From assembly GCF_002113885.1 (NCBI RefSeq), contig NW_018480059.1, forward strand, positions 302,295-366,294: 64,000 bases of DNA. Direction: 5' to 3'. This document shows positions 11,401-64,000 of this stretch, piece by piece; position 1 is the stretch's first letter; every line of letters starts with the position of its first letter. The DNA is from Mizuhopecten yessoensis. Taxonomy: Eukaryota. A program made the position numbers and the translations under genes. The notes under the pieces were generated by a model. The model was given only the letters and a program-made list of their open reading frames with translations, searched no databases and had not been told where the DNA came from.

Positions 11401-12238
11401 TCACACATCATAATTTAGATTAATAGACTCGGTATCCCGTGGACAAATGTGATTGACGCTTTAACTACTTCATCGTTTATGAGATTAGATTGTATAATGT
11501 ATTAGATGCACTCCTGTTTTTATCTTTACAACAAAGACGTATGTAGGGTGATGGCCTACCACACAACTAAGTATGCATAGCGTCTTTAAACAATTGCACA
11601 TCCAAATCCTGACAGTGCAATTTCGTTACTGCATTCATCAAAGAAGTGCTTCAAAAAACCAAGAAAATCAGCGACGGAGAATAACAGATGGCGTTCAGGG
11701 TAATTTGCGGTCACGGGACTGGTCTTTAGGGATATCTGTAATATTTGTTGTGTAGACAGGCTTTTTGTTCTCGATGACTGTATCAACGTCATACCACTCT
11801 ACAAAAACAAAATAGAAGTTTTATAAGATTTATTAACAAAGTTACAAATTAAAAAAATATATAAAAATACCTGGGTCGGCAAAATACAGGTTAGTACATT
11901 CTAAAAATAGATTCCTTCACCTGTGACTGTCTGCTGGATTGCATTGTGTAATGTGTGGTTTATTGAGTTGAAAACAAAAAAGACAACAAACTTTTTTCTT
12001 CTTTTTCCAAATGTAGTTTACAGCCGCACATCTCAGTCAGTAAATGCCATTTTTATGCTTCACCTGTATACCACTGTATATAACGTTATCATTTCAATGC
12101 ATCCTCGCAAGTCAGAGTGTTTAATGTAGTCAAACTCTGGGAATGTATCCTTGTTATTGGACAACAGAATATAAAACCCCTTTTTATAAACAGACGAAAA
12201 GGAACCAAAACCTACAGAATAATCATCATTACCAATGC

Positions 12239-13216
12239 TGAGGATACATTTAAATATGGAGGGACTAGCTCTTTTAACGTCATTTTATGTCATCTTAGAA
12301 ACCAGGCAAGTCAATTAAATACTGATCTTTTTAGAGACCATCTTACTAATAGCCCATCCTGTATATGTGGCAACCATGACGAAGATGTGGATCACTTCTT
12401 TCTATACTGCCCTAGGTATATAATACAAAGACAAATCCTATTAGATTCTCTGTCTCATTTGCAGCTTAACATTCAACTAAACCTACATTTATATCTTGAC
12501 TTAAACCTGATTGAACATTTAGTAAATAATATCAATTTACTAACTAGGGGAAGTAACCACCTTAGTCATGATCCTAATTCTGCTATTTGTGTCTGTGTTC
12601 AGAAATATATTGAGTCTACTAACAGATTTTGAAATAACTGTTAATTATAGTCCCAATGTGTATGTATACATGTCTACATTAATACTCCTTCAACACGGCT
12701 CCTGCTCTGGATTGTCAATGACTGGGTAAGCACACAGTGGTGGTGTGTATGGACATTTTAGTGCTGCCCAGTTATTATTGTTATCTGGAGTAGGTTCAAC
12801 TAATGATATTTAATATTTACTGTATTGAATGAAGGTTCCAGTTTTTGATATTAATATATGTTATAAAATTTATAAAATTTGATTATTTACAAATGAGTAT
12901 ACACACATGGCTTTCCATTTTGAAATAAGTTTTATATTTTAAAAAACCACCAAATGTATTTGTTTTATCTCAGTAATTCTATTTTTTTATTTTTTATTTT
13001 GCTTAGTTCAGAGATAGATAGGGACTATTAAGTATTAAGTATTAAGTACTATTTAATGTTCCAAGCCAGTGCTAATATGTTAATGTCTAAATTATAATTA
13101 TGTTATTGTTTGAAATGTATGTAACCCAAGGGAGAGGGCTTGTATAGGCATAGCCTGTTGCCCAATTCCCATTGAATCAATTGATTTAATAAAATATTTT
13201 GAAATGAATAAATGAA
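12239..13216 (+). mobile_element. 5'-truncated LINE (CR1/L2-like): ORF2 C-terminus plus 3' UTR
   Basis: SPSCICGNHDEDVDHFFLYCPRY Cys/His motif typical of the LINE ORF2 C-terminus; AATAAA and TGAAA-type tail at about 13188-13216; 11-bp direct repeat ATTACCAATGC at 12228-12238 and 13217-13227 (TSD). Confidence 0.75.
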
Positions 13217-14384: not shown

Positions 14385-15279
14385 GTGAGCACAAACATGT
14401 CCTAAGAATTCGACTCAGTGTTAAATGTGACTCGTTCTATTCATTTTCCTTCAGTGTTAAATTTCTTTGTCAGTAAAGTGACTTCATATTTGACCTTTAT
14501 AGTCTCCGTGAATACAGGTCTGGAATATATAGTATCCTTCAGTGTTAAATACGAGTAAAGACCTATCTTTAAGTCACCTTAAATGTTAAATGTGAGTAAA
14601 TAATAGTGTATTAGTCTCCCTCAGTGTTAAATGTGAGTACAGACCTGTCTTATTGTATCCTTCAGTGTTAAATGTGAGTGCAGACCTGTCATATATCATC
14701 ATTTAGTGTTAAATGTGAGTACCGACCTGTCCTATATAACACCCTTTGGTGTTAAATGTGAATATAGATCTATTTTAGATAGTCTTATTCAGTTTATACT
14801 ATCAGTGCAGACAAACTCGTTCGGTATACTCTCATTCAAAGCTAAATGTGCGTACAGACTTGTCCTCATAGTGTCGTGTAATGATAACTGTGAGTACAGA
14901 CTTGCCCTCATAGTGTCGTGTAATGATAATTGTGAGTACAGACTTGTCCTCACAGTGTCGTGTAATGATAATTGTGAGTACAGGCTTGTCCTCACAGTGT
15001 CATGTAATGATAATTGTGAGTACAGACTTGCCCTCATAGTGTCGTGTAATGATAACTGTGAGTACAGACTTGTCCTCAAAGTGTCGTGTAATGATAACTG
15101 TGAGTACAGACTTGTCCTCAAAGTGTCGTGTACTGATAATTGTGAGTACAGACTTGTCCTCACAGTGTCGTGTACTGATAATTGTGAGTACAGGCTTGTC
15201 CTCACAGTGTCGTGTAATGATAACTGTGAGTACAGACCTGTTCTCATAGTGTCGTGTACTAATAATTGTGAGTACAGAC
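14385..15279 (+). repeat. 42-43-bp tandem array derived from the NEMP-A exon 3 end plus donor site
   Basis: Units end in AGTGTTAAAT|GTGAGT or AATGATAACT|GTGAGT; homogeneous 42-bp block at about 14850-15279. Confidence 0.85.
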
Positions 15280-15473
15280 TAAAACAATAAAAAGAATATG
15301 TTTTATTTTCAGATATTGCATTGTGGAATGTAGCATACTTAGTGGCAGGCATTGACATCTTTCTGAGAGCAAAGAGCTGGAGTCGGTAAGTGTGAATTAA
15401 AGTATATTTTAAGGCATGTTGGAAAGTAAAGCTGCCATGGTTTTGATTGTAAACATGTTCATGGTGTTTATTT

Positions 15474-16446
15474 AGACAGTATCTAACAGATCGAGTACTC
15501 ACATCAGCCTAATGGGAGAGCAGACAGTATCTAACAGATCTAGTACTCACATCAGCCTGATGGGAGATCAGACAAACAGATCGAGTACTGACATCAGCCT
15601 AATAGGAGGTCAGACAGTATCTAACAGATCAAGTCCTCACATCAGCCTAATGGGTTATCAGACAGTATCAAACAGATAGAGTACTCACATCAGCATAATG
15701 GGAGATCAGATAGGATCTGACAGATCAAATACGCACATCCGCCTAATGGGAGATCAGACTGTATCTAACAGATCAAGGACTCACATCAGCCTAATAGGAG
15801 ATCAGACAGTATCAAACAGATAGAGTACTCACATCAGCCCAATGGGATATCAGACAGTATCTAACAGATCTAGTACTCACATCAGCATAATGGGAGATCA
15901 GATAGTATCTGACATATCAAATACTCACATCAGCCCAATGGGATATCAGACAGTATCTAACAGATCAAGTACTCACATCAGCCTAATGGGAGATCAGACA
16001 GTATCTTACAGATCGAGTTCTCACATCAGGCTTATGGGAGATCAGATAGTATCTGACAGATCAAATACTCACATCAGCCTAATGGGATATCAGACAGTAT
16101 CAAACAGATTGAGTACTCACATCAGCCTAATAGGAGATCAGACAGTATCTAACAGATCAAGTACTCACATCAGCCTAATAGGAGATCAGACAGTATCTAA
16201 CAGATCAAGTACTCACATCCGCCTAATGGGAGATCAGACAGTATCTAACAGATTGAGTACGCACATCAGCCTAATGGGAGATCTGACAGTATCTTACAGA
16301 TCGAGTTCTCACATCAGCCTAATGGGAGATCAGATAGTATCTAACAGATCAAGTACTCACATCAGCCTAATGGGAGATCAGACAGTATCTAACAGATTGA
16401 GTACTCACATCAGCCTAATGGGAGATCTGACAGTATCTAACAGATA
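15474..16446. repeat. 48-bp minisatellite, about 20 copies
   Basis: Unit AGACAGTATCTAACAGATCGAGTACTCACATCAGCCTAATGGGAGATC; it gives the 16-aa repeat ORF 15842-16600. Confidence 0.9.
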
Positions 16447-16681
16447 CATAATGATTTCACCATCACTAAATGACGGTCATTGTTTACCTGTGTTACAGAA
16501 ACATATACCTACACTACAGTACAGGTGTAACCATCAGTGTAATGACCTCCATTGTTTACCTGTTACAGTAACAGATACCTACACTACAGTACAGGTGTAA
16601 CCATCAGTGTAATGACCTCCATTGTTTACCTGTTACAGTAACAGATACCTACACTACAGGTCAGGTGTGACCATCAGTGTA

Positions 16682-16816
16682 AGTTGATGCATTTTAAGGG
16701 TCCCAATTTGTCCCTTTCGTCCCTTTTCGTCCCTTTTCGTCCCTTTCGTCCCTTTTCGTCCGATTTCTGTCCCTTTCGCCCTTTTCGTCCCTTTCGTCCC
16801 TTTTCGTCCGATTTTC
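16682..16816 (+). repeat. Left terminal inverted repeat with (TTT[T]CGTCCC)n subrepeats
   Basis: Reverse complement of the right end; 9-10-bp internal repeats. Confidence 0.9.
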
Positions 16817-19600
16817 CAAAGATTAGTCAGGCGGTTCACCATGTAAATCTTTTGTTACTGCTATATGGGAAGAACACTCATTATTGTCTGATAAAATATC
16901 TGAACGTGTTTCTAGCAAGAACGAAAGCATGTCGTAACAAAACTCACTTTTGTCATTATTGCTTGCAAGGTTTTACCCGGAAAGACATATTAGATGGACA
17001 TATAGAATATTGCTCAAAACATGATCCCCAGCACGTAAAATTACCAAACGAAAAAGAGAATGATTTGGAATTCAAAGATTTCGATAAACAACTCAAAGTA
17101 CCATTCGTAATCTATGACGATTTTGAAGCCTTTGCTCAAAGAATGGATACATGCGAACCAAATCCTGCAAATTCAAGTACTACGGCAAACATCAAATTTG
17201 AACCGTGTGGGTTTGGGTATCAAGTCGTGTGCATAAACGAAAAGTATACAAAACCACCTGTTATTTATAGAGGCTCTAATGTATCAAGGACATTTTTAGA
17301 AAACCTTATAGAAGAGGAAAACATGATAAAAACGGTATTAAATCATGTAGAACCCATGATCATGACCGATGATGACAATGCTCATAATTGTCACATATGT
17401 AATAAAACGTTTGCCACAGAAGATTTCAAAGTAAGAGATCACTGTCATTTGACTGGGAAATTCAGAGGTGCAGCACACAATGCATGCAATATTAATTTCA
17501 AGTATCTGAAATTCGTTCCAGTCATCTATCACAATTTAAAAGGATTTGATGCTCACATACTCTGTGAAAGTCTTGGATTATTCAAAGATCATGATATTAA
17601 ATGCATTCCAAACAACATGGAAAAGTATATATCATTCAGTCTTGGGAATCTAAGATTCATCGATTCGTTTGCATTCATGTCGCAAAGTTTGGAAACACTC
17701 ACAGAAAATTTGGCAAAGGAGGAATCAAAATTCAAACATTTCACAAAGGAATGTTCTAAAGTGGATTTATTACTGAGAAAGGGAGTATATCCCTATGAAT
17801 ATGTAGATAGTCCCGACAAATTTTTGGAAAATCAACTCCCTTCACATGAAATTTGTTATAGTCAACTAAGTAAATCTCACCTTTTTACTACAAGATAACG
17901 AGCATGCACAGAAAGTGTGGAAAGAAATGAAAATTCAGAATCCAGGTCAGTATCATGACCTTTATCTGAAAACGGATGTCCTATTATTAGCTGACGTATT
18001 TGGAAATTTTAGAACCATATGTCACAATTACTATGAGCTAGATCCATGTCATTACTACACAAGTCCAGGATTAGCATGGAGTGCTGCACTGAAAATGACA
18101 GGTGTGCATTTAGAATTGTTAACAGATCCGGACATGTATCTGTTCTTTGAGCAGGGGGTGCGTGGTGGTGTTTCCATGATCTCTAATAAATATGCCGCAG
18201 CCAACAATCCCTACATCCCCGAAACTTATGATTCTTCCAGACCTCATTCATACATTATGTATGCAGATTGTAACAATTTGTATGGAAAAGCAATGTCCGA
18301 ACCGTTACCTGTTGGAGAGTTTAAGTGGATGGATGACGTGAATAACTCTGACGTCACAAATGTTCCAAAGAATGGAGATTTAGGTTATGTGTTAGAGGTA
18401 GATTTAGAATATTCTGAAGAATTACATGACTCTCATTCCGATTACCCCTTGGCTCCGGAACGTAAAAAAGTCGGAGAAGACGAACTTTCTACTTACAGCA
18501 AAGGCTTATGAAAGGTTAAATCCTAGTACAAAACATACAGGTACAAAATTACATGATCGAGTGGTCACCGAAAAACTGATACCAAACTTAGAGAACAAAA
18601 CCAAATACACAGTTCACTATAGAAGTTTACAATTGTATTTGGAATTAGGAATGAAACTAACAAAGATTCATAGAGTGTTAGAGTTCAGACAACATCCATG
18701 GTTGAGACCCTATATTCAATTTAATACTTCAAAGCGGACTAAATCTAAAAACGAATTTGAAAAAGATTTCTTCAAGTTGATGAACAATGCCGTTTTTGGA
18801 AAGACGATGGAAAACGTGAGAAATAGAGTAGATATCAAGCTTGCACATACGGAGAAAAAGCTGACGAAATACTGTGCAAAACCTCATTTCAGACATTTAA
18901 GATTTTCAACGAAGATCTGACAGGTGTTGAGAATGCAAAGATAAAACTATTTTTAAACAAACCCGTTTATGGTGGACAGGCCATTCTCGATCTTTCAAAG
19001 TGTGTCATGTATGAATTTTATTACAAATACCTCAAACCTAAATATGGAGACGAGATGAAACTTTTGTTTACCGATACGGATAGCTTTTGCTATGAAATTC
19101 AAACACAGGACATCTATGCCGATATGTTGAGAGATAAACAGTATTTTGATTTTTCCAATTATCCCCCAAGCCATTTTTGCTATAGCACCACAAACAAGAA
19201 AGTACCGGGATATTTTAAAGATGAGACTAGCGGTAGACCCGTTAAAGAATTTGTCGGTCTGCGTGCCAAAATGTATAGTTTTAGTTATGCCAAGTCGGAG
19301 AGGTCAGTCGTGGGAGATTTTACCATTGTGACTAACACAATCTGTGAGAAACAAGTAGCGAAAGGTATTGCGAGAGCGACCATTAAGCGTGACTTGAGTC
19401 ACGAGATGTATAAAGAGTGCTTACTTGAAGAGAGAAATAGAATGTGTGAGATGAGCTCGATTAGGTCTGAAGGTCATAAATTACATGTATACACCATCAA
19501 CAAGTCTGGTCTCTCCGCCTTTGATGATAAACGCTATGTTTTGTCAAATGGTTGTGACACGCTTGCATATGGTGATTATAGAATCCCGTATTGTACATAG
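16684..19600 (+). pseudogene. Protein-primed family B DNA polymerase (pPolB), N-terminally truncated, three frameshifts
   Basis: ExoI VIYDDFE, ExoII HNLKGFD, RFIDSF, RKGVYPYEY, ExoIII YLKTDVLLL, RGG, motif A YADCNNLYG, motif [11 protein letters not shown], motif C FTDTDSF, KMY. EndoVII-like Zn insert CHIC...RDHCHLTGKFRGAAHNACN. Frameshifts near 17888, 18508 and 18897. Confidence 0.93.
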
Positions 19601-19682
19601 TTCATTCGCTTCTATTGTACATAAATCATGCGTTTCTATTGTATTTAATAATAACTCATTGTGTTCCTTTTTATGTATATTG

Positions 19683-19728
19683 AATAAAAACTGACAAAGG
19701 ATTGCATTGTATGTATTTATTTTTTATT
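19683..19728. terminator. Convergent polyadenylation signals between pPolB and the protease
   Basis: AATAAA on + at 19683-19688 and AATAAA on - at 19716-19721 and 19723-19728, in the AT-rich gap between convergent stop codons. Confidence 0.5.
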
Positions 19729-19805
19729 TACATTTGATACAAACATGAAAAATATTTGAGCTATGCATAAAGGTACAACAGGCTGTTAAAAAACAGCAGC
19801 ACCGC

Positions 19806-20282
19806 TTACAATTCAGCACAACATGTCTGATTAGAATGTCTGCTGTAAGACCAGCACGGAAAAGTTTTCGAAATGTATTCATATACATAATTGTCATTTT
19901 CTTCTAAGTTATTTCCGAATGGTTTGGTGATGGATTTCATGGGAATACCTCTACAACGATTCAACAGGTAATACAAACAATATTGCCCACACACTCTCGA
20001 TGTATTACTCTGCAATCGTCTATCGTTGTACGTACTTGCTTCAAAGGGGAAAACATCGGGTGGGTGTCCATAACTATCAAAAAATTCCTTCTTATCCTTA
20101 GATGCACAATAAAACGCTAACCAATGTCTTCCTGAGCTATCACTTTTGTCTGTATTGACGATATAACCAGCTGGAAATGTTTTTATTTCGCGCGGTACCT
20201 CGTCACGTGCATAAACTCCGATGACTGTTTGTCTCATAGCAGGATCACAGTCTATGATGCAACGTAACTGTGAAGTATTCAT
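19806..20282 (-). CDS. Adenain-like maturation cysteine protease (Polinton PRO), intact ORF
   Basis: NTD...GRHWLA (His), EFFDSYG (Asp), LQ (oxyanion Gln), VCGQYC (Cys). Confidence 0.9.
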   Translation of the reverse strand: MNTSQLRCIIDCDPAMRQTVIGVYARDEVPREIKTFPAGYIVNTDKSDSSGRHWLAFYCASKDKKEFFDSYGHPPDVFPFEASTYNDRRLQSNTSRVCGQYCLYYLLNRCRGIPMKSITKPFGNNLEENDNYVYEYISKTFPCWSYSRHSNQTCCAEL

Positions 20283-21588
20283 GATAACACAATGTCCCTC
20301 GCAGCGTTGATTTCGAAGTAACCAGGATATTCACAATAAATGATACTGCTGAGGTTAGTGCCGTTCCAAAGATTACCTCTAGCCTCACGTTTCCCTGTTT
20401 AAGCAAGGTAAGGTATTGATTGGTTTGGAAGCTAGGTTCCAACTCAAAGGTATAGAACGCGTATCCTTTTGCAATTTCGTCCCTCTCTATGTCGGAGCCA
20501 GAATCATTTTGCCATTTCCCCGGCGATTGTAACATGTTCCTTAGAACGGGAATGATGGTCTGACCGCCAGTACTGCCATACTTGAGTTTTAAGGGGTTTC
20601 CTCCGACTGGTATTCCATCCACATAGAGTCCGATTGATGTGACGTCGTAGGGCTGGAAAAACCACGGGTTCTGTTCATAGTCACCGGTGGTTCTTGTGGC
20701 GTTCACAAATCAGACTACCACGAGGTTTGGTCTCAGGCCTTGGAAGATATTATCATAGGTGAAATTTGTTGACCCCACAGGAATCTGTTTGACCATGGTC
20801 TGAGTAAACGGATATTTTGCATTAGTCACCTCGAGAGCCTGGCTTTGTGCATAGATGACTGCTGGGTTGACCTTGACTTTACTCACACGCAGTCGAATGT
20901 CTTCTAATGATACATTATAATCGACAGATGCGGTCCCGGAAAGGAGACAAAAACTTGGTTTGGATCTATAGAGTATCACGTTGACGTTAACCTGATTCAA
21001 TAAGTACCTATCCATCTTAAACAAATCGTGATAGAGAGGCCCGACCATATCTACCACCTTCCCACCTTCGAACATTTGAGCTCTTATCAAGAGCGCATTG
21101 TTCGAACCGGTCCTTGGGCTATGTTCGTCCATATCTCCCTCGTCGTCCTTTTCCCATAGTTGGGTAGTCAACTGGGTCGCCTTTGCTTCCTTAGAATTTT
21201 TCAATAAAGCTTGTATATAGGCCTTAAATGGATAATGGCTCGTTGTAGAAACGACAGCCTTCCCCTGTAGAGTAAAGTCCACTTGTGAAAATAACGAAGG
21301 TAAAAACAAATTGATGGGTCCCACGTTCTTATCTAAAGCGATGGCGCTTCCATCCCCTTTCGTTATTTTTACCTTTGCATAGATAAGGCTGCTGTGTAAA
21401 TCAAGCAATTCCAATCCGTTCTGTCCGGAAACGACGAATTAAACGACAGAGTCATTCGTTATCTGAGATATCGGTAACACGTCCTGATAGTAAATATTTT
21501 CTACGGCTGTCTGTGTCGGTGGACGGTCGAATACGGCTAATTCTGACGGTTGTGCTTCTCTGAAGAAATCTTTGTTTAACGCAGCCAT
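20279..21588 (-). pseudogene. Polinton major capsid protein (double jelly-roll, PY-like), about 436 codons, disrupted
   Basis: MAALNKDFFREAQPSELAVFDRPPTQTAV..., LFSQVD, YPFKAY, DRYLLNQV, GDYEQNPWFFQ, C-terminal EYPGYFEINAARDIVLS*. In-frame stops at 21439-21441 and 20710-20712; frameshift near 20333. The stop overlaps the protease start (ATGA). Confidence 0.85.
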
Positions 21589-22031
21589 TGTGATATCAGA
21601 CTTTTATTGGAGGTCCTTTTGTTCTTTTTCGTTGCTGTTCTTTTCACCTTGCTCGCTTTTCTTTTCGTCGCTTTTCGTTTACTCGCTTTTCGTTTTGGTT
21701 GCTTCTTCTACCGTGGAGTATGCACATGTCGACGTTTCCCAGCAGACTGACGACGAAGTGGAGTTCGTTTCCTTTTAATCTCAGACTTCACTTGTTCTAC
21801 GACTTGCTGAGCTGGTGAGACCATATTTACGTTCACCTCTCGTGAAGGTAAGGATTTCCCTCCCTCTTTATCGTTTTTGTCGATTGGAATCATGAATTCG
21901 TTCGAATTCTGTGTCAATCCTCCGCCAAATTGTTTCGCGTTTCGTTTTGTATTTTCTGTATAAGCGTTTTCTTTTCCTCGTGCCACGTCTTGATAATATT
22001 TCATCCATTTCCCCACGTTTGGAACGTACAT
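21576..22031 (-). pseudogene. Small basic core/DNA-condensing-like protein with a QFGGG putative protease site
   Basis: MYVPNVGKWMKYY...AKQFGGGL...VSPAQQVVEQVKSEIKRKR...; one internal TAG (21708-21710), then KKQPKRKASKRKATKRKASKVKRTATKKNKR; directly upstream of MCP. Confidence 0.6.
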
Positions 22032-22039
22032 CTTTGAAA

Positions 22040-22590
22040 CGTTCATGACTCTTTCGGCATATCCAGCTTTGATGGTGCTAGAAGAAGAGCTGAAGTGATG
22101 TATATTGTTATCCTTTGTCCATTCTTTTATCCATCTATTATAAAATTCAGATCCCGCGTCTGTTCTCAGGCGCTTGCAGAGCTGTCCCTTTACTGTGATT
22201 TTTTTTAATGCTTTTAGTACTTCTTTCCCCTGTTTGGCTTCGAGAGGTTCCACCCTTAAGAACCTACTGAATACATCAATGACTATGAGTAAAAAATCTA
22301 ATACCATCGTTATATTTAGAGATGTTTGAAACGTCAGCTAAATCTGCATCGTATTGTTCATAAGGGCCCGATACTTCGACTCTCGCTCTCTTGAATGAAC
22401 GCTTGACAGGTTTCTGTAGACTGTAATCGTCTAGACTCTGAATATACCTTCTAATCTTATGTAAACCAGGTTTTTTGAAACCTTTCGTTTTTAATACTTG
22501 GTGCACCTTTCCAGGGCTGAGAAATGCACCTCCATTCTTCAAATCGTAATAGACTCCGTCTACAAGTCGTTTCTCCTCCTCAGTCAACAT
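22040..22590 (-). pseudogene. Retroviral-like (RVE) integrase, frameshifted and C-terminally truncated
   Basis: VYYDLKNGGAFLSP..., QYDADLAD (D1), LIVIDVFSRF, RTDAGSEF (D2), KAGYAERV (E). Frameshift in the T-run near 22293; homology ends just after the catalytic Glu. Confidence 0.9.
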
Positions 22591-22649
22591 ATTCAATAAT
22601 AATGAGACAAAAATATCTACATGCAATCTTTTATTATCATTGATACATA

Positions 22650-22991
22650 TTACAATGTTTTATGAAACCAGTTTTCTAAGCGATTCATGGACACAACCAT
22701 TCTGTCGACTCTATCTTTCCAATTGTCTGTCTTCAGTTCTTTAATTCTCGATTCGGCATTGCACAATTGTGATATGAAAGCATTTCTAGCGCCTCTTTCT
22801 ATCTTTAATTGAACAGTTTCTCGAATAAAGTCACGAATCACTCTAATGTCATCCACATGAATAAATGCATCATTTATATCACATTGTCTCTCGCTTACTA
22901 TTTCTCGAACTTGGCTTGCATATGTCAGTTTCAATAAGTTGTGCATCCAGATGGATTCTAGGGAATTCTCATCAAGAAGAGCACCATTCAT
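22650..22991 (-). CDS. Unknown Polinton protein, apparent paralog of 23540-23968 without the Cys/His motif
   Basis: WMHNLLKLTYASQVREIVSE...INDAFIHVDDIRV aligns by eye with LLKNLLFLSYAYAVKSKITE...FDEALTNINHLEV. Confidence 0.5.
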   Translation of the reverse strand: MNGALLDENSLESIWMHNLLKLTYASQVREIVSERQCDINDAFIHVDDIRVIRDFIRETVQLKIERGARNAFISQLCNAESRIKELKTDNWKDRVDRMVVSMNRLENWFHKTL

Positions 22992-23265
22992 TTCGTCGAT
23001 ATTTCCTGTCAGAACTGGGTGGGTAAGGTAAAGCACAATGACGATCACGACACTCCGCAGAAAAGTTGTTATGCTTCCAATAGTTCAGTGTTTTCCCACA
23101 CTTGTAGCAGGTAACGTAATCACTGACACCTTCGTGAACAAATCCGTCACATGCTAGCTGATAAGGAGTCTGACGAAGTTTGTAAACCCACTGAGAAAAT
23201 GACAGCAGTCGATCGATACAGCTTGTCATGTGATGGTGGACTGGATATTCGGGTATAAGCTCCAT
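22972..23265 (-). CDS. BIR-domain (IAP-like) protein 2, degenerate C-terminal half
   Basis: PVHHHMTSCIDRLLSFSQW...PYQLACDGFVHEGVSDYVTCYKCGKTLNYW matches the BIR core; spacing of the final H/C ligands is atypical. Confidence 0.75.
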   Translation of the reverse strand: MELIPEYPVHHHMTSCIDRLLSFSQWVYKLRQTPYQLACDGFVHEGVSDYVTCYKCGKTLNYWKHNNFSAECRDRHCALPYPPSSDRKYRRNEWCSS

Positions 23266-23539
23266 CTATAAGTAGAATAAATAGTTACATTTCTATTATT
23301 CTTACCCATTGTGTTACGTGTTTGTCTACAATAATTCCGTCATTACACTAGTCGTTTCTCACCTCTGTCAGAGTAGTTTTCCCCATAGCACACAGATGAG
23401 GCAAATGTACCTATGACGTCACTCGTTTTCTTCAACGATTACGGAAAGCTGATCACCATCATCATCAATTTCTACATACTGATCACCATTCATAATGCAT
23501 TATACGTCAACTCTCTGTAAGTCAAATAAATAGATATGT

Positions 23540-23968
23540 CTAAACTTCACCGATTTTCTTTACGTAATCCTTTATCTTTTCGCTGTAGCTATGTTTCACG
23601 TAATTCTCATCCCTCAAACGTTCGTCTTGCATCAGACGTTGTAATGTGCCTGAAAGTATACACGACTGTATGGCAAATTCACGCCAGGTCTTTTCCACTT
23701 CTAGATGATTTATATTGGTCAATGCTTCGTCAAAATGTAAGTCTATAACAACAGCACTGGAATACATCAGACATTCATGTTCATGTTGACTACCTCGACG
23801 ATTCTTGCAGCCTAAACATACGAATAGTTCTGTTATTTTTGATTTTACAGCGTATGCATAAGAGAGAAACAACAGATTTTTCAGTAGTCTCCGATAGACT
23901 TTTTCTTCAATTTCTCCAATTAAAAAGTTTTGAAGTCTTTCGCCAAACAGATCTGTGTTTAACTCCAT
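23540..23968 (-). CDS. Unknown Polinton protein with a CLGC-x5-SQHEHEC putative Zn-binding motif
   Basis: Intact ORF of about 142 aa, co-oriented within the element; CxxC...HxC cluster. Confidence 0.6.
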   Translation of the reverse strand: MELNTDLFGERLQNFLIGEIEEKVYRRLLKNLLFLSYAYAVKSKITELFVCLGCKNRRGSQHEHECLMYSSAVVIDLHFDEALTNINHLEVEKTWREFAIQSCILSGTLQRLMQDERLRDENYVKHSYSEKIKDYVKKIGEV

Positions 23969-24051
23969 CACGAAAAAAACTCCTATATGTTCATTAAATA
24001 CGAATTACAAAGTAGAGAAGCCGTCGTAATACAAACTTACACCTCCTATGT

Positions 24052-24348
24052 TTATAAAACAAATAACATGTGTTGAAAAAGACAATCTTTCGACCACCTT
24101 ATGTGCTCTGTTTTGATATCGTCGAAATAGTTCCAATGTTTTAATGAAGCACCACACATAAAACACGTCACACAGTCTTCAATACCCGTATAGAAAAATC
24201 CGTTACTGGCAAGTTGATATGGAGAATGAGGATGATGTTTAGACCAATGTATAAACGTATCCACGCGATTGCAGCACTTACCTAACGATGGATGACGTGG
24301 TTGTATTACGTTTGTGATGTGTCGAACGCAATCAGTTTCACAGGACAT
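24052..24348 (-). CDS. Single-BIR-domain (IAP-like) protein 1, intact
   Basis: RVDTFIHW...PYQLASNGFFYTGIEDCVTCFMCGASLKHWNYFDDIKTEHIRWSKDC: full BIR consensus with C-x2-C-x16-H-x6-C. Confidence 0.9.
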   Translation of the reverse strand: MSCETDCVRHITNVIQPRHPSLGKCCNRVDTFIHWSKHHPHSPYQLASNGFFYTGIEDCVTCFMCGASLKHWNYFDDIKTEHIRWSKDCLFQHMLFVL

Positions 24349-24423
24349 TTCAACTTTCCATAAAGGAGCAAACGCACTGTAGGCTTTCGGATAAGAAAAG
24401 TAGTTTTTTAAACAAGGTTTCTG

Positions 24424-24588
24424 TCAAACATACTTTTGCCGGTCTTTGATATAAATCTTGATCTCACCTTTCACTTTCTTCACGATGAATTCTTGAGTCA
24501 ATCCTAAACGACAGACTATCTTTTTAGATGTGTCCTCACTGACAATAATGTCTTCCCTCTTGACGTGGTCGATGTGTGCCTGTGCCAT
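24424..24588 (-). CDS. Possible PC4-like ssDNA-binding protein fragment
   Basis: CRLGLTQEFIVKKVKGEIKIYIKD resembles the PC4 pattern LG-x-V-x-F-KG-x-I-x-IR; TATATAAA about 32 nt upstream of the ATG. Confidence 0.4.
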   Translation of the reverse strand: MAQAHIDHVKREDIIVSEDTSKKIVCRLGLTQEFIVKKVKGEIKIYIKDRQKYV

Positions 24589-24619
24589 GAGTCGACTGCT
24601 AGCTGGTAATAAATGCTGC

Positions 24620-24667
24620 TTTATATAGTACTTCTCACATGGCCGAAATTCATCCGTTTCGGATGAA
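24620..24667 (-). promoter_or_regulatory. Putative TATA box and 8-bp palindrome just inside the right TIR
   Basis: TATATAAA on - at 24620-24627; TTCATCCG-TTT-CGGATGAA hairpin at 24649-24667. Confidence 0.4.
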
Positions 24668-24687
24668 GGGTCGAAAGTCGTGGGGGG

Positions 24688-24908
24688 CAAAAGGGACGAA
24701 AGGGACGAAAAGGACGAAAAGGGACGAAAGGGACGAAAAGGGACGAAAAGGGACGAAAGATGGATGAGAGGGACGAAAAGGAACGAAAAGGGACGAAAGG
24801 GACGAAAATCGGACGAAAAGGGACGAAAGGGACGAAAGGGACGAAAAGGGACGAAAAGGGACGAAAGGGATGAAAGAGACGAATTGGGACCCTTAAAATT
24901 CATCTACT
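24688..24908 (-). repeat. Right terminal inverted repeat with (GGGACGAAA[A])n subrepeats
   Basis: Ends in GGGACCCTTAAAATTCATCTACT; its repeat tract is longer than the left one. Confidence 0.9.
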
Positions 24909-27900
24909 AGTGTAATGACGTCCATCGTTTACCTGTGTTACAGTAACAGATACCTACACTACAGTACAGGTGTAACCATCAGTGAAATGACGTCCATTGT
25001 TTACCTGTGTTTCAATAACAGATACAGGTGTAGCTATAGGCGTAATGGCTTCCATTGTTTTTCTCTTGATTTTTCTTAGAAGACAGTTTGAGCAGGTAAA
25101 TTCAAAGACCATAAAACAGAATTCTAGTATAATGTTATATAAATGGATAATTAGTAAATTTAACATTTTAAAATATTTATAAGTTTTTACCTAATAAAAT
25201 TAAACGATACTGTGGTACAGAGCCTTCAAACGGCCAGCTTTATCATGATTGCAGCTGCCATATCGTCGCAATTCCGGTTCTGGACCTATTTTATGAAACA
25301 GGTGTTTGACCCAATCACAAGCAAGCTGATCCAATATTGGCAATACATCCTTGGCTATGTCATCTTAGCGGGTCTCATAAGTTTCTGTGCCTGCTACAGA
25401 TACGGTCCAGTGACAGATACCCGCAGCCTTAACCTCATACAGTGGTTTATACAATTGGTTTCCCTCATTCTTATTTACCATGGGACGCAGTTACCTGAGT
25501 TATCTGTGATCATTATTGTTCACTTACTAGCACTCTATAATATTCCAAAAGGATGGTACATGAATAGATTCACATACTATCTCAGGTTAGTTGACGACTT
25601 TCCTACTCAAACATTTAACATATTCTGAGATTATGTAGATGTACTTTTTCAAATTATGTCGATGTTGTTTGTTGGTGTTGGCCATTGACAATTCCTGCAA
25701 ACAATTCTTGAAATCGGTGTTGCGGTTTTTGATGAGAAGTCAAAAATGCTACTAAAATAATGATATTAGTGGTAAGAGGACAGGGATGAGGAACCGACAC
25801 TTTATACTAATATTGATGTCTTTTCTTCCCCCGCACTGTAGCTTTCTTTTCTTATAATTATGACTTTTCCCCGTACTTTAGTTCCTTCACTTATCTTTTC
25901 AAACGATCATTTCAGACTCTTGTGAAAAAGAAGGTAGCAAAATAACTATGACATTGAAGACTTTATAGGTTTTTAGATTTGTAGAACTTCACTAATATTG
26001 AAATTTTATACAATTAAGGGTTTACGCACCTAGCCTTCTGTTTCAACCGTAGTTTACACCAATTTAGATTTCGACCAGTAAGCCCCTAAACGACGAGTCC
26101 GCGAAGGACGAGACAGGTGTGTGGCGTAGATCATTTATGCGTTACATACTGTATTTACTACTAATTTTAAATGTACAATATCATACTGCGGACTTTTTAA
26201 CATGAATAAACTTGACATCATTCATCACTGGATTCAGGTTTAAGTTTTTCACATCGAAGCGTAAGTTCCTGACGGAAGACGAGTACATCAAACAGACCAA
26301 CGAGGAAACCACAAAGGCACTAGAGGAGCTCCGCAGCTTCTGTCAGAGTCCTAAATGTGATACATGGAAGGTCGTCAGTCACCTGTCCACACCTTTAAAG
26401 TAAGAATCTGTACACATACACCTTTCCTGTCATTAATATTCTTTAATGTAAATTGTTAATCAGGACAAAAGTCGTCTTCATGAGATTGATTCCCATTTTA
26501 TATGTTCGTTCTCGGTAATATTTTATAGCACCATTGCTAGACGTAAGTCTGGAAATAATGCCAACCATTGAACCACTCATTAACCGACAACGGTGAAGAT
26601 TTTATTTGCCATTCATTCGCAACAAAACAAACTCCACACCCCTCCCCCTTTCTTACAGAAGTCATACAGAGTATTATTTTGCTGTCTTGTATTAGCCATG
26701 AAGTACGATCTGAATTCAATAGTGATAAAAACAAAATGGTTCTATGACTTACCAGGGCTCGTATTCATAAAACCGTTTTCATGCTTAAGCATAGATTTTG
26801 TGTTCAAGCTCAATTTCTTGTTCCAGATATAAATGGAGAATCGTTTCATGAATACGGGCCCTGGCACGAAGTACTTTTCGAAATTGCCCCGAAATTGTTT
26901 TTTTCTTATTATTTGGTTTGTTCTTCTTAAGCGGGACTTTATATTCAGGACAAATGCAAGTAAACTGTATGTGTGAACAATGCAAAACGACACACAGACA
27001 AACTAAAAGGTTACCAAGGGCTGTTCTGAAATAAGTCATAGCAATTACATCGAGACACTGTTAAAAGGACACAAATTAGTTGTTCTAAGCAACAAACGAA
27101 ACTTAAATTTTCATCTGACTAAGCTTGTAATTTTTCAGGCTGATTCGATGTCTACGACGGTCACCTTTACCTCTGATTGTTCAGTTTTTTGAGTCAATTC
27201 ATTATCACTAAAAATAAGATAAAAAACCAATTGCTTGTGTTTACAGGTTTGCCAAGTTTTTGGAGGTAGATTCCTGGCACGTTACAGATCATGAACTACG
27301 AGAGTATGATAGTGGGCCTGAACCAACACCTCCGGTCGATCCAGACTCGTCAGACGAGGATGAAACCTTAGTTTAACTGAATTCCTTTGCATTATAGATA
27401 TTTGTCACCTCACCTAAATCAAAGTGGATCTGATAGAATAATTTCATCAGACATGAACATCATGAAACCACACCATCATTCCTCGACTCAACTTGTCAGA
27501 AAAAGGATTTTGATATGTGATATCGTTGCTTCTTCTTCTGTTAACGTACAATCCTAGTTGAGAATCACGTACTGCGCTTTAACATATATTGACCTGAAAA
27601 TTACAATGACATTGAAACAAAAATCACGAGTTGTGACATTTTTTTTCATTTGTTTCATGTTCGCACACTGTTCCAGAACACTTGTTTTTAAAGAAGAATA
27701 TTTTGTATCAGATACATTGGCTGTCTACCAAACGCAGCATTATATCTTCAATTTTCGTATCCTTTGCTTAAACTTAAACCACCGTGGAATTCGTACACAT
27801 TAAGCATGGACTTGGGAAGTTCATAAGGGCAAAGTGATTCATAAAATACTCTTCGATGCCTATATAATTATATATAACAGCAAACTTTAGCTTGCTTATG

Positions 27901-28431: not shown

Positions 28432-28710
28432 TATCCTTGATACCCAAGTGGTTACGCTCACTTTCGCTCTCTGCACCCCTGGAATATGTCATAGCAAATT
28501 TAAGGCACACGGCTAGCTATGTGATTGGCTACGCTGATACCTGTCCTCTGAATGTTAAAGAGGCGTGACACCCGACTTAGAGACCGTCAATTGTCCCTTT
28601 ACGAGACCGAGATGTCTAGGGTGGCGCACACCGAGCCTTAGATTTTGCTATGACATATTCCATGGGTGCAGAGAGAAAACATCAGCGTAACCCCTGGAGT
28701 ATCGAGGATG
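28432..28710. mobile_element. MITE (CATCCTCGATAC...GTATCGAGGATG family)
   Basis: About 65-bp TIRs; same family as 34780-35136 and the fragment at 7010-7066. Confidence 0.7.
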
Positions 28711-34300: not shown

Positions 34301-37300
34301 AGTATGTAATAAATACCTGGAATAGCTTGATACCCTGGTTGATACTGGAGGTACAGCACATCTCACGGATGGAGTGCATGCTAAGCTGAGGCGCCCCAAT
34401 ATCAATGGTTGGCATCCCTAGCTTGGCAGACATGATCGGACCAATGGTAGAACCACAAGGCGAGTCATTTTTCACCACAAAGTCCTGGCACAAGAGAAAA
34501 AGTTAGCAGTACCCTGTTATATAATCATTTAAGAAAAAGATAATAAAATAAACACAAGTGAGTGGGCCTTACTTAAATATACCCCTCACTCCCGCATACT
34601 TGGCACAAAAACACTAAACTTCAAAGGTTGACAAATGTTACCCTTGACCTTATCCGATGTCTGCCAAAGTTTAATCAGGTGTAGAACTTGATGTTACCTT
34701 ACTATGTTGTAAATATAAACTAATCCTGTTACAATCTGTAAAATACAACTGAAATTTCATGGCTTTGTATGTAGTGCCTCATCCTCGATATCCAGGGGTT
34801 ACGCTCACTTTCACTCTCTGCACCCCTGGAATATGCCATAGCAAAATTGAAGGCTCTCAGTGTGCACCGCTTTGTGGATGAGACAAGAAGGCTAGTGTGA
34901 TCCTTTGATATACATCAAAAGAATCTCGCGGTTGCGTAACGGTAAAACTTACTGGCTTTGAAGTCAGGCGTCACTCCTCTGTAATCTTCAAAGGACAAGT
35001 ATCAGCCTAGTGATTGATCAGGTTTTTTTTACCGGACACCAATCAAATAGCTAGCAGTGTGTCTTCAATTTTGATATGACATATTCCAGGGGTGCAGAGA
35101 GCGAAAGTGAGCGTAACCCATGAAGTAAAGAGGATGGTAGTACCTATAATTGATCACGAAAAAGCAAAATTGCTAAATAAAACCGCTTTTAGTCATTTGC
35201 TCAAATTTTTCGGATATTGAAATACTCATTAAATATGTGCTGAACATTGAACTTTTCTTGGTAATATGTATCCTCCCTGAAATTAATTGAGGTACTTGGG
35301 TAATATGTATGCTTACTAGGATTTTCCTGATTTTGATAGATATCATCAAAACACACTAACCTAGAAGATTATAGCAAGTATTAAAATTGCACAAACTATG
35401 CCAAACATTAAACTTGAGCTGGGCATGGTCAATATGTTTCCTCACCAAGATTAAAAATATATCAAGTATTAAATGGATACTATTAACAAATCTGATTGCT
35501 GCATGCACCTTAAATATCTATAGATCGAGCCAAACATTCAACTTGAGCTTGTTACCTGAGCACCAAGTAATATACATCCTCATCAAAATTCATCACAATG
35601 TTATCAATTTTATGAAATCATTCAAAATCTCACATAGGATGCTGATGCTGTCGCAAGGCATTACAAAATTAGCGATACCTGTGACACCATTACAGGTTAC
35701 ACCAATTGGATGCCAACAGTGAGGGAAAACCAACACCTATATCGTGTTCCATGTTATTCATCTGCAACTTTCCGTGGCCCTGAGTTTACCTACCTGTAGT
35801 GGCACACCAGCAGTCTTGGCCACCTCTCTCAAGATAGCAGTAGTGATGGCTGTGGTCGCGTAACGCTGGTTAGCGTTGAACTTCACAACATATCCCTGTC
35901 AAAAAACGGTGAGGAAATCAACAGGTGTATTGTTTATGTTGTACAATGTAGTAGGGCATAACAACATAAAACATTGGAGGGAAATGAAACCTCATAGACA
36001 TAGATAGACATAGATATCTTACAGTAAATTTAACATTTAAAATCTGATTGTAGACATGAAATGACATACAAGTGAGTCAATGTCATCTAAACAAAATCAG
36101 TAGCTCATAAGATAATGACAAATTATACTTCTGAAGGCTCCTCCTTTTTTTGTTGTTGATATTTCACGTTTAAAATTTACATACAATTTAAATGCTTTAC
36201 ATTTAATGAGAAAGAAATTGTTAAGTAAAAAGGAAATATGCTAGTATTAAAAAAATGATATTATAAAACATGTAGAGATTTTGTGTTGATATTTATGGTA
36301 AATGTTCAAATTCCCAAACTCTATCTTCAAAGTCTGAAGTTTTTAATAAACAGCCAATCTCACAGCCTACCATATTAAGCCTTTTTTTTGCAAGGAAGGT
36401 TAGTTGATCCAAGTTTATCTGACTAGTTTCACTTTGTATGAATAAAGCTTAATAAAAAATACTACTACTGCTAAAACAGGCAGAGATATCTATTTGAGGT
36501 CACTGACATTTGACCTCAAACTATGTCTTTAATTTCTGGGTGAGGATTCCATATATTTGTGACCATCTAGTAACAAGGCTAATGTGTTTGAACGGATGAA
36601 TATTCTTAGTGAAAAAAAGGTTTATAAGTGTTTATCTGGTGTATACTGGTAAGACACTACTGACCTTGTGTAATCCTGGCTGGTGGTTACTCTCATGTTT
36701 GTCTCTAAAATCAGTTTTATTATTCATTATATTTTAATTATCACAAAATTGTAGAAATTTATTCTTAAAAAAGTGCTGACTCCCAAATTATACTTCTGAA
36801 GGCTACTGCTTTTTTTTTTTTATATTTCACGTATGAATTTTACATACAACTTAAATGCTTTACATTTAATGAGAAAGAATTTGTTAAATAAAAAGGAAAT
36901 ATGCTAGTATTAAACAAGAGGCCCAGAGGGCCTGTATCGCTCACCTGAATATGTTTGAAATAATTGGTATGAAGTAAAGATATATCACTCCATTGTAGGG
37001 GCTGTAAGTGCATATGAAATTTCAGAAAGATCCATCCAGTACTTGAGATATAGCGAATTTTTTTTTCAAAAACAGCCCCGCCCCTATGCCCATATGGGGA
37101 TCATACCCACCGTTTATACAAAATTGGTTCCCCTTCACCAAACGATGCTTTATACCAAATTTGAACAAAATCCTGTCATTCCTAAAGAAGGAGAAGGATT
37201 TTTGAAGAATTTGCTATGATTCCCCTATTGGGCCCCTCCCTTCTGGCCCAAAAGGGGCCACACTCACTGTTTATACAAAATTGAGTCCCTTTTGCCCATG

Positions 37301-63997: not shown

Positions 63998-64000
63998 ACG

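What the first reader, a model, noticed from the sequence alone, without database searches (positions are those of the whole stretch)
22650..24348. Duplicated [BIR + CxGC-SQ-H-C family protein] cassette carried by the Polinton
Seen in sequence: on the minus strand the order is BIR1 (24348-24052, complete Zn ligands, no RING), unknown X1 (23968-23540, CLGCKNRRGSQHEHEC), BIR2 (23265-22972), unknown X2 (22991-22650, shares NLL-L-YA--V and D-A-I-V patterns with X1 but has lost the Cys/His motif). These ORFs stay open while pPolB, MCP and integrase are broken, though short ORFs survive more easily by chance. Established knowledge: BIR proteins act as anti-apoptotic factors in baculoviruses and other large DNA viruses, and bivalves have expanded IAP repertoires. 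Inference: a two-gene host-manipulation module, tandemly duplicated, suggesting a true infectious stage and a possible route for BIR exchange between element and host.
Basis: partly seen in the sequence, partly recalled or inferred. Interest (0 to 1): 0.85.

Follow-up and report, generated by a model that had tools for sequence, protein, structure and literature searches.

The report
Polinton's conserved BIR and zinc-protein genes
A dead, internally deleted Polinton (virus-like transposon) still carries an intact block of two small cell-death-inhibitor-type (BIR) genes alternating with two genes of an undescribed helical family. Related elements keep the same block under purifying selection, so it is a real accessory module, though not a simple recent duplication.

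Summary
Four minus-strand ORFs sit at the stated coordinates, inside an 8.2-kb element with terminal inverted repeats and a 6-bp target duplication.

- **BIR1** is a complete single BIR domain with no RING.
- **BIR2** is a BIR that keeps all four zinc ligands but has a spacer 8 residues shorter. A sibling element has the same short spacer.
- **X1** belongs to an unannotated family (46 representatives). It has a near-invariant C-x-G-C…Q-x2-H-x-C motif and a confident all-helical model with no match in PDB or BFVD.
- **X2** is a family member lacking the Cys/His segment. This shows only through the family profile (E about 1e-7), not by direct comparison with X1.

Sibling contigs at 70-81% nucleotide identity keep the order ORF0-BIR1-X1-BIR2-X2-integrase, with dN/dS of 0.08-0.32. 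A more distant lineage has ORF0-BIR-X-(unrelated 112 aa)-integrase. Another lineage has X but no BIR.

X2 resembles a distant branch of the family more than it resembles the X1 clade, and no DNA-level repeat remains. "Tandem cassette duplication" is therefore only partly supported.

IAP homologues in Polinton-type adintoviruses are already published. What is new is the X family, its pairing with BIR, and the short-spacer BIR. The anti-apoptotic function is inferred, not shown.

The parts
16676..16681 (.). Left target-site duplication (AGTGTA), within a 70-bp-period satellite
   Evidence: Read. The same hexamer directly flanks the other end. The satellite is reported.
16682..16816 (+). Left terminal inverted repeat, mostly 9-10-bp tandem units
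   Evidence: Inverted-repeat pairs I3-I25, tandem repeats, sequence.
16850..19600 (+). Protein-primed DNA polymerase B gene, broken: at least three frame changes. Start approximate.
   Evidence: Pfam DNA_pol_B_2 on two pieces (3.1e-8 and 0.0037) and an Endonuclease VII-like zinc motif in the first piece. Four ORF pieces in three frames.
19806..20282 (-). Adenain-like (C5) cysteine protease ORF, open, 158 aa
   Evidence: Pfam Peptidase_C5 E 0.0024, 18 bits, below the cut-off of 21.3. Weak support.
20245..21588 (-).
   Evidence: Three ORF pieces in one frame. No Pfam, PDB-sequence or PHROG match. Identity not verified.
21996..22626 (-). rve integrase remnant: about the first 200 of 385 residues, one frame change, C-terminal half missing
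   Evidence: Pfam rve 1.7e-8. tblastn of sibling integrases gives two matches in two frames covering query residues 1-201.
22650..22991 (-). X2: 113-aa member of the X family without the Cys/His segment; open
   Evidence: dN/dS 0.32 against a sibling.
22972..23265 (-). BIR2: 97-aa single BIR with an 8-residue shorter spacer between C-x2-C and His; open; overlaps the X2 start
   Evidence: Pfam BIR 2.5e-9, alignment, PDB matches stop just after the conserved Trp, dN/dS 0.16.
23266..23539 (-). Unique 274-nt spacer between X1 and BIR2; siblings have about 20 to 100 nt here
23540..23968 (-). X1: 142-aa all-helical protein with the C-x-G-C-x6-Q-x2-H-x-C motif; open
   Evidence: AlphaFold2 pLDDT 95.5. 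No fold match. dN/dS 0.08-0.17.
24052..24348 (-). BIR1: 98-aa complete single BIR, no RING; open
   Evidence: Pfam BIR 2.9e-19. Best solved single-domain matches are DIAP1 BIR2 and XIAP BIR2. dN/dS 0.08.
24424..24588 (-). ORF0: small conserved first gene of the block, 54 codons here against 80-84 in siblings (one in-frame stop)
   Evidence: 70% identity to the sibling ORF0. tblastn outer bounds.
24620..24627 (-). TATA-like box about 35 nt upstream of ORF0, conserved in three lineages
   Evidence: Sequence and alignment with L011, L015 and L018.
24689..24908 (-). Right terminal inverted repeat (tandem 9-10-bp units)
24909..24914 (.). Right target-site duplication (AGTGTA), followed by the same 70-bp satellite

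Best explanation
The block ORF0-BIR1-X1-BIR2-X2 is the conserved terminal accessory gene block of one Polinton/Maverick (adintovirus-like) lineage. It lies between one inverted repeat, just inside which a conserved TATA-like box sits, and the integrase gene.

Shown:
- The genes are inherited with the element.
- Their order is kept across lineages.
- All four evolve under purifying selection.

Inferred:
- BIR1 is a RING-less BIR that most resembles the peptide- and caspase-binding type of cellular BIR domains. It most likely holds off host caspase-dependent cell death while the element replicates.
- BIR2 lacks 8 residues between the first ligand pair and the His, so it probably has a changed or lost peptide groove and a different partner.
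- X1 is a zinc-binding (Cys-Cys-His-Cys) helical protein of unmatched fold. X2 is a zinc-less paralogue.
- X genes also occur in a related element without any BIR. X is therefore more likely an element-encoded regulator or host-factor binder acting alongside BIR than an obligate BIR subunit.

The two pairs are old paralogues, not a recent duplication. The window copy is a defective, internally deleted element. Its open cassette frames may be chance survival, and nothing here shows it is still expressed.
For: Element:
- Inverted repeats plus a 6-bp duplication enclose the block.
- pPolB, rve integrase and a weak adenain-like match are present.

Genes:
- Pfam BIR for both BIRs.
- BIR1's best single-domain solved matches are DIAP1 BIR2 and XIAP BIR2/BIR3-type domains at 4e-15 to 1e-13. 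BIR1-type domains score about 1e-10.

Conservation of order:
- L009 has ORF0-BIR1-X1-BIR2. L006 and L007 have X1-BIR2-X2-integrase. L004 has X2-integrase. These are collinear with the window at 70-77% nucleotide identity.
- L015-L018 have ORF0-BIR-X-112aa-integrase.
- L025 has a BIR remnant directly upstream of X.

Selection:
- dN/dS is 0.08-0.32.
- Uncorrected pN/pS is 0.22-0.38, with 0 of 2000 bootstraps reaching 1.

X family:
- 46 representatives at E<=1e-3.
- Q and H are invariant and C, G, C, C are at least 90% conserved.
- Model pLDDT is 95.5.
- X2 membership is shown.

Other:
- The TATA-like box is conserved in three lineages.
- IAP homologues in adintoviruses are reported in PMC8502044 and in a 2026 preprint.
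Against: - No functional or expression data of any kind.
- The host taxon was not determined.
- L021 carries X and the same integrase family but no BIR. BIR-X pairing is therefore frequent but not universal.
- Several X-family members sit on short contigs with no informative neighbours.
- The window copy has lost half its integrase and the genes beyond it, and its other genes carry at least seven interruptions. Any activity would have to be in trans.
- With roughly one interruption per kb elsewhere in the element, zero in 1.37 kb of cassette has P of about 0.2 (my own Poisson estimate).
- The sibling contigs are at most 6.6 kb, so whether they belong to intact elements is unknown.
Confidence: 0.7

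Rival explanations
1. One reading: a single tandem duplication of a two-gene [BIR+X] unit inside the element produced BIR1-X1-BIR2-X2, after which X2 lost its Cys/His segment.
For: - The order strictly alternates, and both pairs are homologous.
- BIR2 scores higher against the element's own BIR1s (45-60 bits) than against any single solved BIR (at most 40 bits).
Against: - The X2 profile finds P0034, P0027, P0021 and P0022 (22 to 11 bits) but not X1-clade members (at most about 6 bits).
- No DNA similarity is left between the halves.
- Lineage C has one BIR, and a gene in the X2 position with no detectable likeness to X.
- BIR1 is closer to the lineage-C BIR (76 bits) than to BIR2 (45-56 bits). 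If there was a duplication, it is older than the split of these lineages, or BIR2 evolved very fast.
Confidence: 0.3
2. Stepwise origin: two X paralogues of different subfamilies were already in the element (by old duplication or by recombination between element lineages). A second BIR was later inserted between them, either copied from BIR1 or captured from a host IAP.
For: - X2 is nearest to the 'SQ-type' distant branch, members of which sit in other element lineages next to the same integrase family.
- Lineage C has no second BIR.
- L021 has X followed by two small genes and no BIR.
Against: - The gene in the X2 position of lineage C and the small genes of L021 are not demonstrably X-like.
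- The short sequences give little phylogenetic resolution.
- Loss of BIR2 in lineage C explains the data equally well.
Confidence: 0.35
3. Host co-option: the element is dead, but the host keeps the cassette open because it uses these BIR and X proteins itself.
For: - All four frames are open while the polymerase, the integrase and the 447-codon frame are broken.
- Bivalve genomes hold many intronless single-BIR genes, some of them expressed (PMC7831173, PMC8917759).
Against: - Open frames are compatible with chance (P about 0.2).
- ORF0, the first gene of the same block, is cut short.
- The measured purifying selection spans divergence between element lineages, not the time since this insertion.
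- No expression data.
Confidence: 0.1
4. The ORFs are exons or fragments of a host IAP gene, or chance ORFs, unrelated to the element.
For: BIR domains are abundant in some invertebrate genomes.
Against: - They lie inside the repeat-bounded element with its target duplication.
- Siblings keep the same compact order next to the integrase, with overlapping stop and start codons.
- Pfam scores are well above the cut-off.
- dN/dS is far below 1.
Confidence: 0.02

Closest known systems
IAP homologues of adintoviruses / Polinton-type elements (Starrett et al. 2021, PMC8502044; leafhopper adintovirus preprint 10.64898/2026.07.28.741253)
   Same: A BIR/IAP-type gene carried as an accessory gene by an element with protein-primed PolB and a retrovirus-like integrase.
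   Different: Those reports give the IAP one sentence or a figure label. No partner gene, second short-spacer BIR, or X family is described. I did not compare sequences, because fetching animal-virus records was barred.
BIR proteins of large DNA viruses of invertebrates
   Same: A virus-borne BIR presumed to block host cell death (established knowledge; not tested here).
   Different: BIR1 and BIR2 are about 98-aa single-BIR proteins without a RING. No such viral protein came back as a named hit in the searches I could run, and none was fetched.
Intronless single-BIR 'IAP' genes of bivalves, interpreted as retrocopies (Song et al. 2021, PMC7831173; Witkop et al. 2022, PMC8917759)
   Same: One-exon, single-BIR, RING-less genes dispersed in the genome. 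[quoted passage not shown]
   Different: Here the BIR genes are cargo of a DNA element, not retrocopies. The one search I could run on BIR1 saw only proteins of 54-171 aa and found only one unnamed relative. No link to those annotated genes is shown.
Adintovirus 'Oncoid' genes and 'Adintoc' conserved unknowns (PMC8502044)
   Same: Small terminal accessory proteins with Cys motifs and no known homologue.
   Different: Oncoids are defined by an LXCXE motif next to paired CXXC. Window X1 has no LXCXE, and X has a single C-C-H-C set. Whether X equals one of the numbered Adintoc groups was not tested.
Adenovirus left-end early region (analogy only, from general knowledge)
   Same: The first transcription unit next to the terminal repeat combines a cell-death blocker with a zinc-binding regulator.
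   Different: No sequence or fold similarity was found. This is a working analogy, not a relationship.

Membership tests
Polinton / Maverick (adintovirus-like) element | Terminal inverted repeats | tested here: met
   Arms at 16682-16816 and 24689-24908.
Polinton / Maverick (adintovirus-like) element | 6-bp target-site duplication | tested here: met
   AGTGTA directly flanks both ends, inside one satellite array.
Polinton / Maverick (adintovirus-like) element | Protein-primed family B DNA polymerase | tested here: met
   PF03175 at 3.1e-8 and 0.0037 on two pieces. The gene is broken.
Polinton / Maverick (adintovirus-like) element | Retrovirus-like (rve) integrase | tested here: met
   PF00665 at 1.7e-8. 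Only the first half remains. The sibling integrase has rve plus a chromodomain.
Polinton / Maverick (adintovirus-like) element | Adenain-like cysteine protease | tested here: inconclusive
   PF00770 at E 0.0024, 18 bits, below the cut-off of 21.3.
Polinton / Maverick (adintovirus-like) element | Double jelly-roll major capsid protein, penton and FtsK-type packaging ATPase | tested here: not met
   No ORF of the element matches any capsid or ATPase family. The 447-codon frame is unidentified. Genes that follow the integrase in siblings are absent here, so the element is internally deleted.
BIR domain / IAP family | Match to the BIR profile above Pfam's gathering score | tested here: met
   BIR1 69.8 bits and BIR2 38 bits, against a cut-off of 22.9.
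BIR domain / IAP family | Zinc ligands C-x2-C-x16-H-x6-C | tested here: met
   BIR1 is canonical. BIR2 keeps the four ligand columns but with x8 instead of x16, in the window and in a sibling.
BIR domain / IAP family | C-terminal RING (many cellular and baculoviral IAPs) | tested here: not met
   The proteins are 97-98 aa with a BIR only.
BIR domain / IAP family | Binding of caspases or IAP-binding-motif peptides; inhibition of cell death | not testable with these tools
   Only likeness: BIR1's best solved single-domain matches are DIAP1 BIR2, XIAP BIR2 and cIAP BIR3-type domains.
X family (unnamed; C-x-G-C-x6-Q-x2-H-x-C helical proteins) | Profile match to the family | tested here: met
   X1 1.3e-47 and X2 9.8e-8 among 1527 window pieces. 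X2 scores 30 bits against at most 9.8 in 5000 shuffles. hhalign 93%.
X family (unnamed; C-x-G-C-x6-Q-x2-H-x-C helical proteins) | Cys/His motif (Q and H invariant; C, G, C, C at least 90% of 40 members) | tested here: met
   Met by X1. Not met by X2, which has a gap over the whole segment.
Tandem duplication of a [BIR+X] cassette | Each duplicate is the other's closest relative | tested here: not met
   X2 is nearer to P0034 and P0027 than to the X1 clade. For the BIRs the result is inconclusive.
Tandem duplication of a [BIR+X] cassette | Residual nucleotide similarity between the two units | tested here: not met
   blastn with word size 7 gives nothing better than E 0.078.
Adintovirus 'Oncoid' | LXCXE motif next to paired CXXC | tested here: not met
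   Window X1 has no LXCXE and a single C-C-H-C set. Definition taken from PMC8502044.

The most novel reading that the evidence does not exclude
X is a new zinc-binding fold that works as the partner of RING-less viral BIR proteins, forming a two-component cell-death blocker. Polinton copies carrying this block would then be a main source of the dispersed, intronless single-BIR 'IAP' genes counted in bivalve genomes and so far attributed to retroposition.
Probability: 0.1. Interest if true: 0.75.

Novelty: new variant of a known kind. Interest (0 to 1): 0.5.

Why it matters
- **An uncharacterised family.** X has about 46 representative clusters, no Pfam entry, and a confident model with no match among solved or predicted viral structures. 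It recurs in the terminal accessory region of one Polinton lineage, often beside a BIR gene. That gives it a context from which a function can be sought.
- **Bivalve IAP counts.** Single-exon BIR genes can be cargo of DNA elements. Published bivalve IAP expansions include dozens of intronless single-BIR genes read as retrocopies, and DNA transposons are enriched near IAP genes (PMC7831173). Checking those genes for a neighbouring X gene, integrase or inverted repeats would show whether part of the "expansion" is endogenous virus-like DNA.
- **A natural BIR variant.** The short-spacer BIR2, conserved under selection, bears on which parts of the BIR fold are dispensable.

Tried and rejected
- **Direct X1-X2 homology.** BLASTP and hhalign of the two small families were not significant. 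Only the enlarged family profile settled it.
- **Word-index homologue searches.** They found very few relatives: 2, 1 and 1 hits. The BIR1 search says nothing about longer IAPs.
- **Exact look-up of window BIR1 and X1.** Not on record, so the source genome was not identified. Searching papers for the run accessions also found nothing.
- **Fold searches of X1.** The shallow model and the confident model gave best E about 1 and TM at most 0.3. The scattered Smac/DIABLO and Bcl-2-family rows are at noise level, and I reject them as evidence. The family profile against PDB sequences gave one meaningless hit. Pfam on 40 members gave nothing, and PHROGs gave nothing.
- **The 112-aa gene in the X2 position of lineage C.** No likeness to X1 or X2, despite a C-terminal stretch that looked similar by eye.
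Not identifiable by Pfam, PDB sequence or PHROGs.
- **P0026 and P0047.** These long hits of the X profile are probably false, with other domains or repeats. They were kept out of the alignment.
- **Bootstrap script.** A first script failed on ORF0. The rewritten one aligned only 2 ORF0 codons, so no selection estimate is given for ORF0.
Full report
**1. What is at the coordinates**

Pfam calls both BIRs above the gathering score: 69.8 and 38 bits against a cut-off of 22.9. It finds nothing else in them and nothing at all in X1 or X2.

BIR1 has the canonical ligand spacing. BIR2 matches only profile positions 1-57 of 70, and every match to a solved BIR stops just after the conserved Trp. An alignment with its sibling and the BIR1s explains this: all four ligand columns are invariant, but BIR2 lacks 8 residues between C-x2-C and His, in the window and in the sibling alike. 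That is a trait of the gene, not damage to this copy.

**2. The element**

Inverted repeats made of 9-10-bp tandem units lie at 16682-16816 and 24689-24908. Reading both ends shows the hexamer AGTGTA directly outside each end. The same 70-bp satellite continues on both sides, so this is an 8,227-bp insertion (16682-24908) with a 6-bp target duplication.

Inside the element are:
- a protein-primed PolB gene (PF03175), split over four ORF pieces in three frames, so at least three frame changes;
- an open 158-aa ORF with a weak adenain-like match;
- an unidentified frame of about 447 codons with two in-frame stops;
- an rve integrase of which only about the first 200 of 385 residues remain, in two frames;
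- then X2, BIR2, X1, BIR1 and a small ORF0.

Genes that follow the integrase in siblings have no counterpart here, and no capsid or packaging ATPase family is detectable. The copy is a defective, internally deleted Polinton with at least seven point interruptions plus one large deletion. ORF0 is itself cut short: 54 codons against 80-84 in siblings, one in-frame stop.

**3. Are X1 and X2 related?**

Directly, hardly. BLASTP aligns 19 residues at E 0.013, hhalign of the two small families gives 2.7% probability, and no nucleotide similarity links the two halves of the block.

An HMM search of 1.84 billion representatives with the X1 alignment found 46 proteins at E<=1e-3 and 14 at E<=1e-10. In an alignment of 40 of them, Q and H are invariant and C, G, C, C are at least 90% conserved, giving C-x-G-C-x6-Q-x2-H-x-C followed by an aromatic-F-acidic-x-A-L/F stretch.

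Against this profile the X2 family scores 93% probability, E 3.4e-7, over 92 columns, with one gap covering exactly the Cys/His segment. An HMM of the family run over all 1527 six-frame pieces of the window ranks X1 first, X2 second (9.8e-8) and nothing else below 0.019. 5000 shuffles of X2 reach at most 9.8 bits against 30.0 for the real sequence.

The reverse search matters for the history. The X2 profile finds P0034, P0027, P0021, P0042 and P0022 (22 to 11 bits), but X1-clade members only at noise level. X1 and X2 are deep paralogues.

**4. Siblings**

Relatives came from short assembled contigs of public runs and marine metagenomes. I read and compared them as they stand and joined nothing.

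- **Lineage A** (L001; nucleotide identity 75-77% by blastn over the contig, 81% within the X1 coding sequence): end of BIR1, X1, start of BIR2.
- **Lineage B** (twelve contigs from one run series, 70-77% nucleotide identity): ORF0-BIR1-X1-BIR2 (L009), X1-BIR2-X2-integrase (L006, L007) and X2-integrase-next gene (L004), collinear with the window and with overlapping stop and start codons.
- **Lineage C** (identical X protein on six contigs from several marine metagenomes; X is 39% identical to X1): ORF0-BIR-X-112aa-integrase-143aa. There is no second BIR, and the 112-aa protein is not detectably X-like. One of these contigs continues into a reverse transcriptase plus GIY-YIG ORF, so it is eukaryotic genomic DNA rather than a free virus genome.
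- **Lineage D** (L025): a weak BIR C-terminal remnant directly upstream of X.
- **Lineage E** (L021): X followed by two small ORFs and the same integrase family, with no BIR.

A TATA-like box about 35 nt upstream of ORF0 is conserved in the window and in lineages B and C. In lineage B, short tandem repeats precede it, as in the window's terminal repeat. Pairing is common, though not universal.

**5. Selection**

| Gene | dN/dS, window against siblings |
|---|---|
| BIR1 | 0.08 |
| X1 | 0.16-0.17 (0.08 between the siblings L001 and L007/L009) |
| BIR2 | 0.16 |
| X2 | 0.32 |

Synonymous sites are near saturation in some pairs. I therefore also counted uncorrected pN/pS, which is 0.22-0.38 with 0 of 2000 codon bootstraps reaching 1.

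This measures constraint along the whole path between lineages, not since this insertion. For the window copy itself, the rest of the element carries roughly one interruption per kb. Zero in 1.37 kb of cassette then has a Poisson probability of about 0.2 (my estimate), which is not evidence of selection on this copy.

**6. What the proteins look like**

BIR1's best single-domain matches among solved structures are DIAP1 BIR2 and XIAP BIR2, followed by cIAP BIR3-type domains (4e-15 to 1e-13). XIAP and cIAP BIR1-type domains score about 1e-10. BIR1 thus resembles the peptide- and caspase-binding type.

With the 40-sequence alignment, AlphaFold2 gives X1 a confident all-helical model: pLDDT 95.5, pTM 0.86, with a 44-residue first helix, the Cys/His segment in short turns, then six more helices. 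Foldseek finds nothing significant in PDB (best E 1.1, TM at most 0.29) or in BFVD (best E 1.2). The family profile finds nothing meaningful among PDB sequences, and no member has a Pfam family. A library of cellular predicted structures was not available. The fold is therefore unmatched in what I could search, not proven new.

**7. Origin of the double pair**

| Comparison (phmmer) | Bits |
|---|---|
| BIR1 against the lineage-C BIR | 76 |
| BIR1 against DIAP1 BIR2 | 59 |
| BIR1 against BIR2 | 45-56 |
| BIR2 against the element BIR1s | 45-60 |
| BIR2 against the best solved single BIR | 40 |

BIR1 is therefore orthologous across lineages. BIR2 is somewhat nearer to the element's BIRs than to the solved cellular ones, but host mollusc BIRs could not be included. 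Taken with section 3, a single recent cassette duplication is excluded. An ancient one, or a stepwise origin, both remain possible, and I rate them about equally.

**8. Comparison with what is known**

Starrett et al. 2021 state that adintovirus (Polinton-type) homologues of Bcl2 and IAP were observed, and they define numbered 'Adintoc' groups of conserved unknowns (PMC8502044). A 2026 preprint labels an IAP gene in leafhopper adintoviruses. A BIR gene on a Polinton is therefore not new.

I found no description of the X family, of a BIR-X block or of the short-spacer BIR. This search covers only the open-access library.

In the hard clam, 51 of 159 IAPs are intronless, 42 of them in one clade of single-BIR genes read as a retroposition burst, and DNA transposons are enriched around IAP genes (PMC7831173). 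Oysters have a few such genes too (PMC8917759). Mavericks make up 1.7-1.9% of the hard clam genome (PMC8905726). That some of those genes are Polinton cargo is a hypothesis worth a descriptive check. Nothing here shows it, and I did not determine the host taxon of the window.

**9. Verdict**

This is a real, conserved accessory block of one Polinton lineage, sitting in a dead copy. The BIR part is a known kind of cargo. The X family, its zinc-less paralogue and the short-spacer BIR are new details. Function is inferred only.

**10. Slips and limits, stated as required**

- I stopped, used it in no call, and rest no conclusion on it. The statement about BIR2 rests.
- While counting interruptions I worked out from the ORF tables, in my own reasoning, where some of them lie. 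These places are not in my notes, my scripts' output or this report. The ORF tables printed by the tool do show piece bounds.
- I fetched only short contigs that carry relatives of the finding's own proteins.
- The two N in the window were left alone.

Noticed in passing
window 16000-16682 and 24915-25080: Two satellites: a 48-bp unit (9 copies, 16000-16445) and a 70-bp unit (16478-16682) that resumes right after the element. The Polinton inserted into the 70-bp array about 300 bp upstream of a NEMP-family exon.
   Followed up: partly
window 25212-25628, 53048-53455, 54316-54753 (+): ORFs matching the NEMP (nuclear envelope membrane protein) family occur twice, about 29 kb apart (7e-29 and 2.7e-28). 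This suggests two NEMP-like gene copies or a segmental duplication in the host.
   Followed up: no
window 23266-23539: A 274-nt spacer between X1 and BIR2 that is unique in the window and absent from siblings, which have about 20 to 100 nt there. Its origin is unexplained.
   Followed up: partly
L003:685-949: In this sibling contig BIR2 is split into two pieces while X1 and X2 stay open. Copies within that species differ in which cassette gene is damaged.
   Followed up: partly
L015:1-3912: Beside the sibling element's end lie a reverse transcriptase ORF and a GIY-YIG ORF on the other strand (Penelope-like arrangement). The marine-metagenome contig is therefore animal or other eukaryotic genomic DNA.
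   Followed up: partly
L021:93-3160: A related element has an X-family gene followed by two small unknown ORFs and the same integrase family, but no BIR. By eye the 133-aa ORF resembles the zinc-less X2, but no search supports this.
   Followed up: partly
L004:610-1767: The intact sibling integrase (385 aa) carries a C-terminal chromodomain (3.5e-5) that the window remnant has lost.
   Followed up: yes
window 12117-12632 (+): An ORF with a zf-RVT match (5.1e-5), probably a retroelement remnant upstream of the Polinton.
   Followed up: no
window 45672-46134; 59937-60105; 63837-64000: Close inverted repeats: 199-nt arms at 87%, 68-nt arms at 87%, and 63-nt arms at 94%. They look like MITE-type or hairpin elements.
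   Followed up: no
window 4045-4153 / 34922-35030; 28433-28709 / 34791-35135; 7011-7065: One family of short repeats recurs in inverted orientation at several places in the window, probably a dispersed small transposon.
   Followed up: no
window 14706-15290, 15842-16600: Pfam rows such as P53_C (2.7e-9, no stretch passing the threshold on its own) and Bflower_2 (below its cut-off). The second ORF overlaps the 48-bp satellite. I take these rows for artefacts.
   Followed up: no
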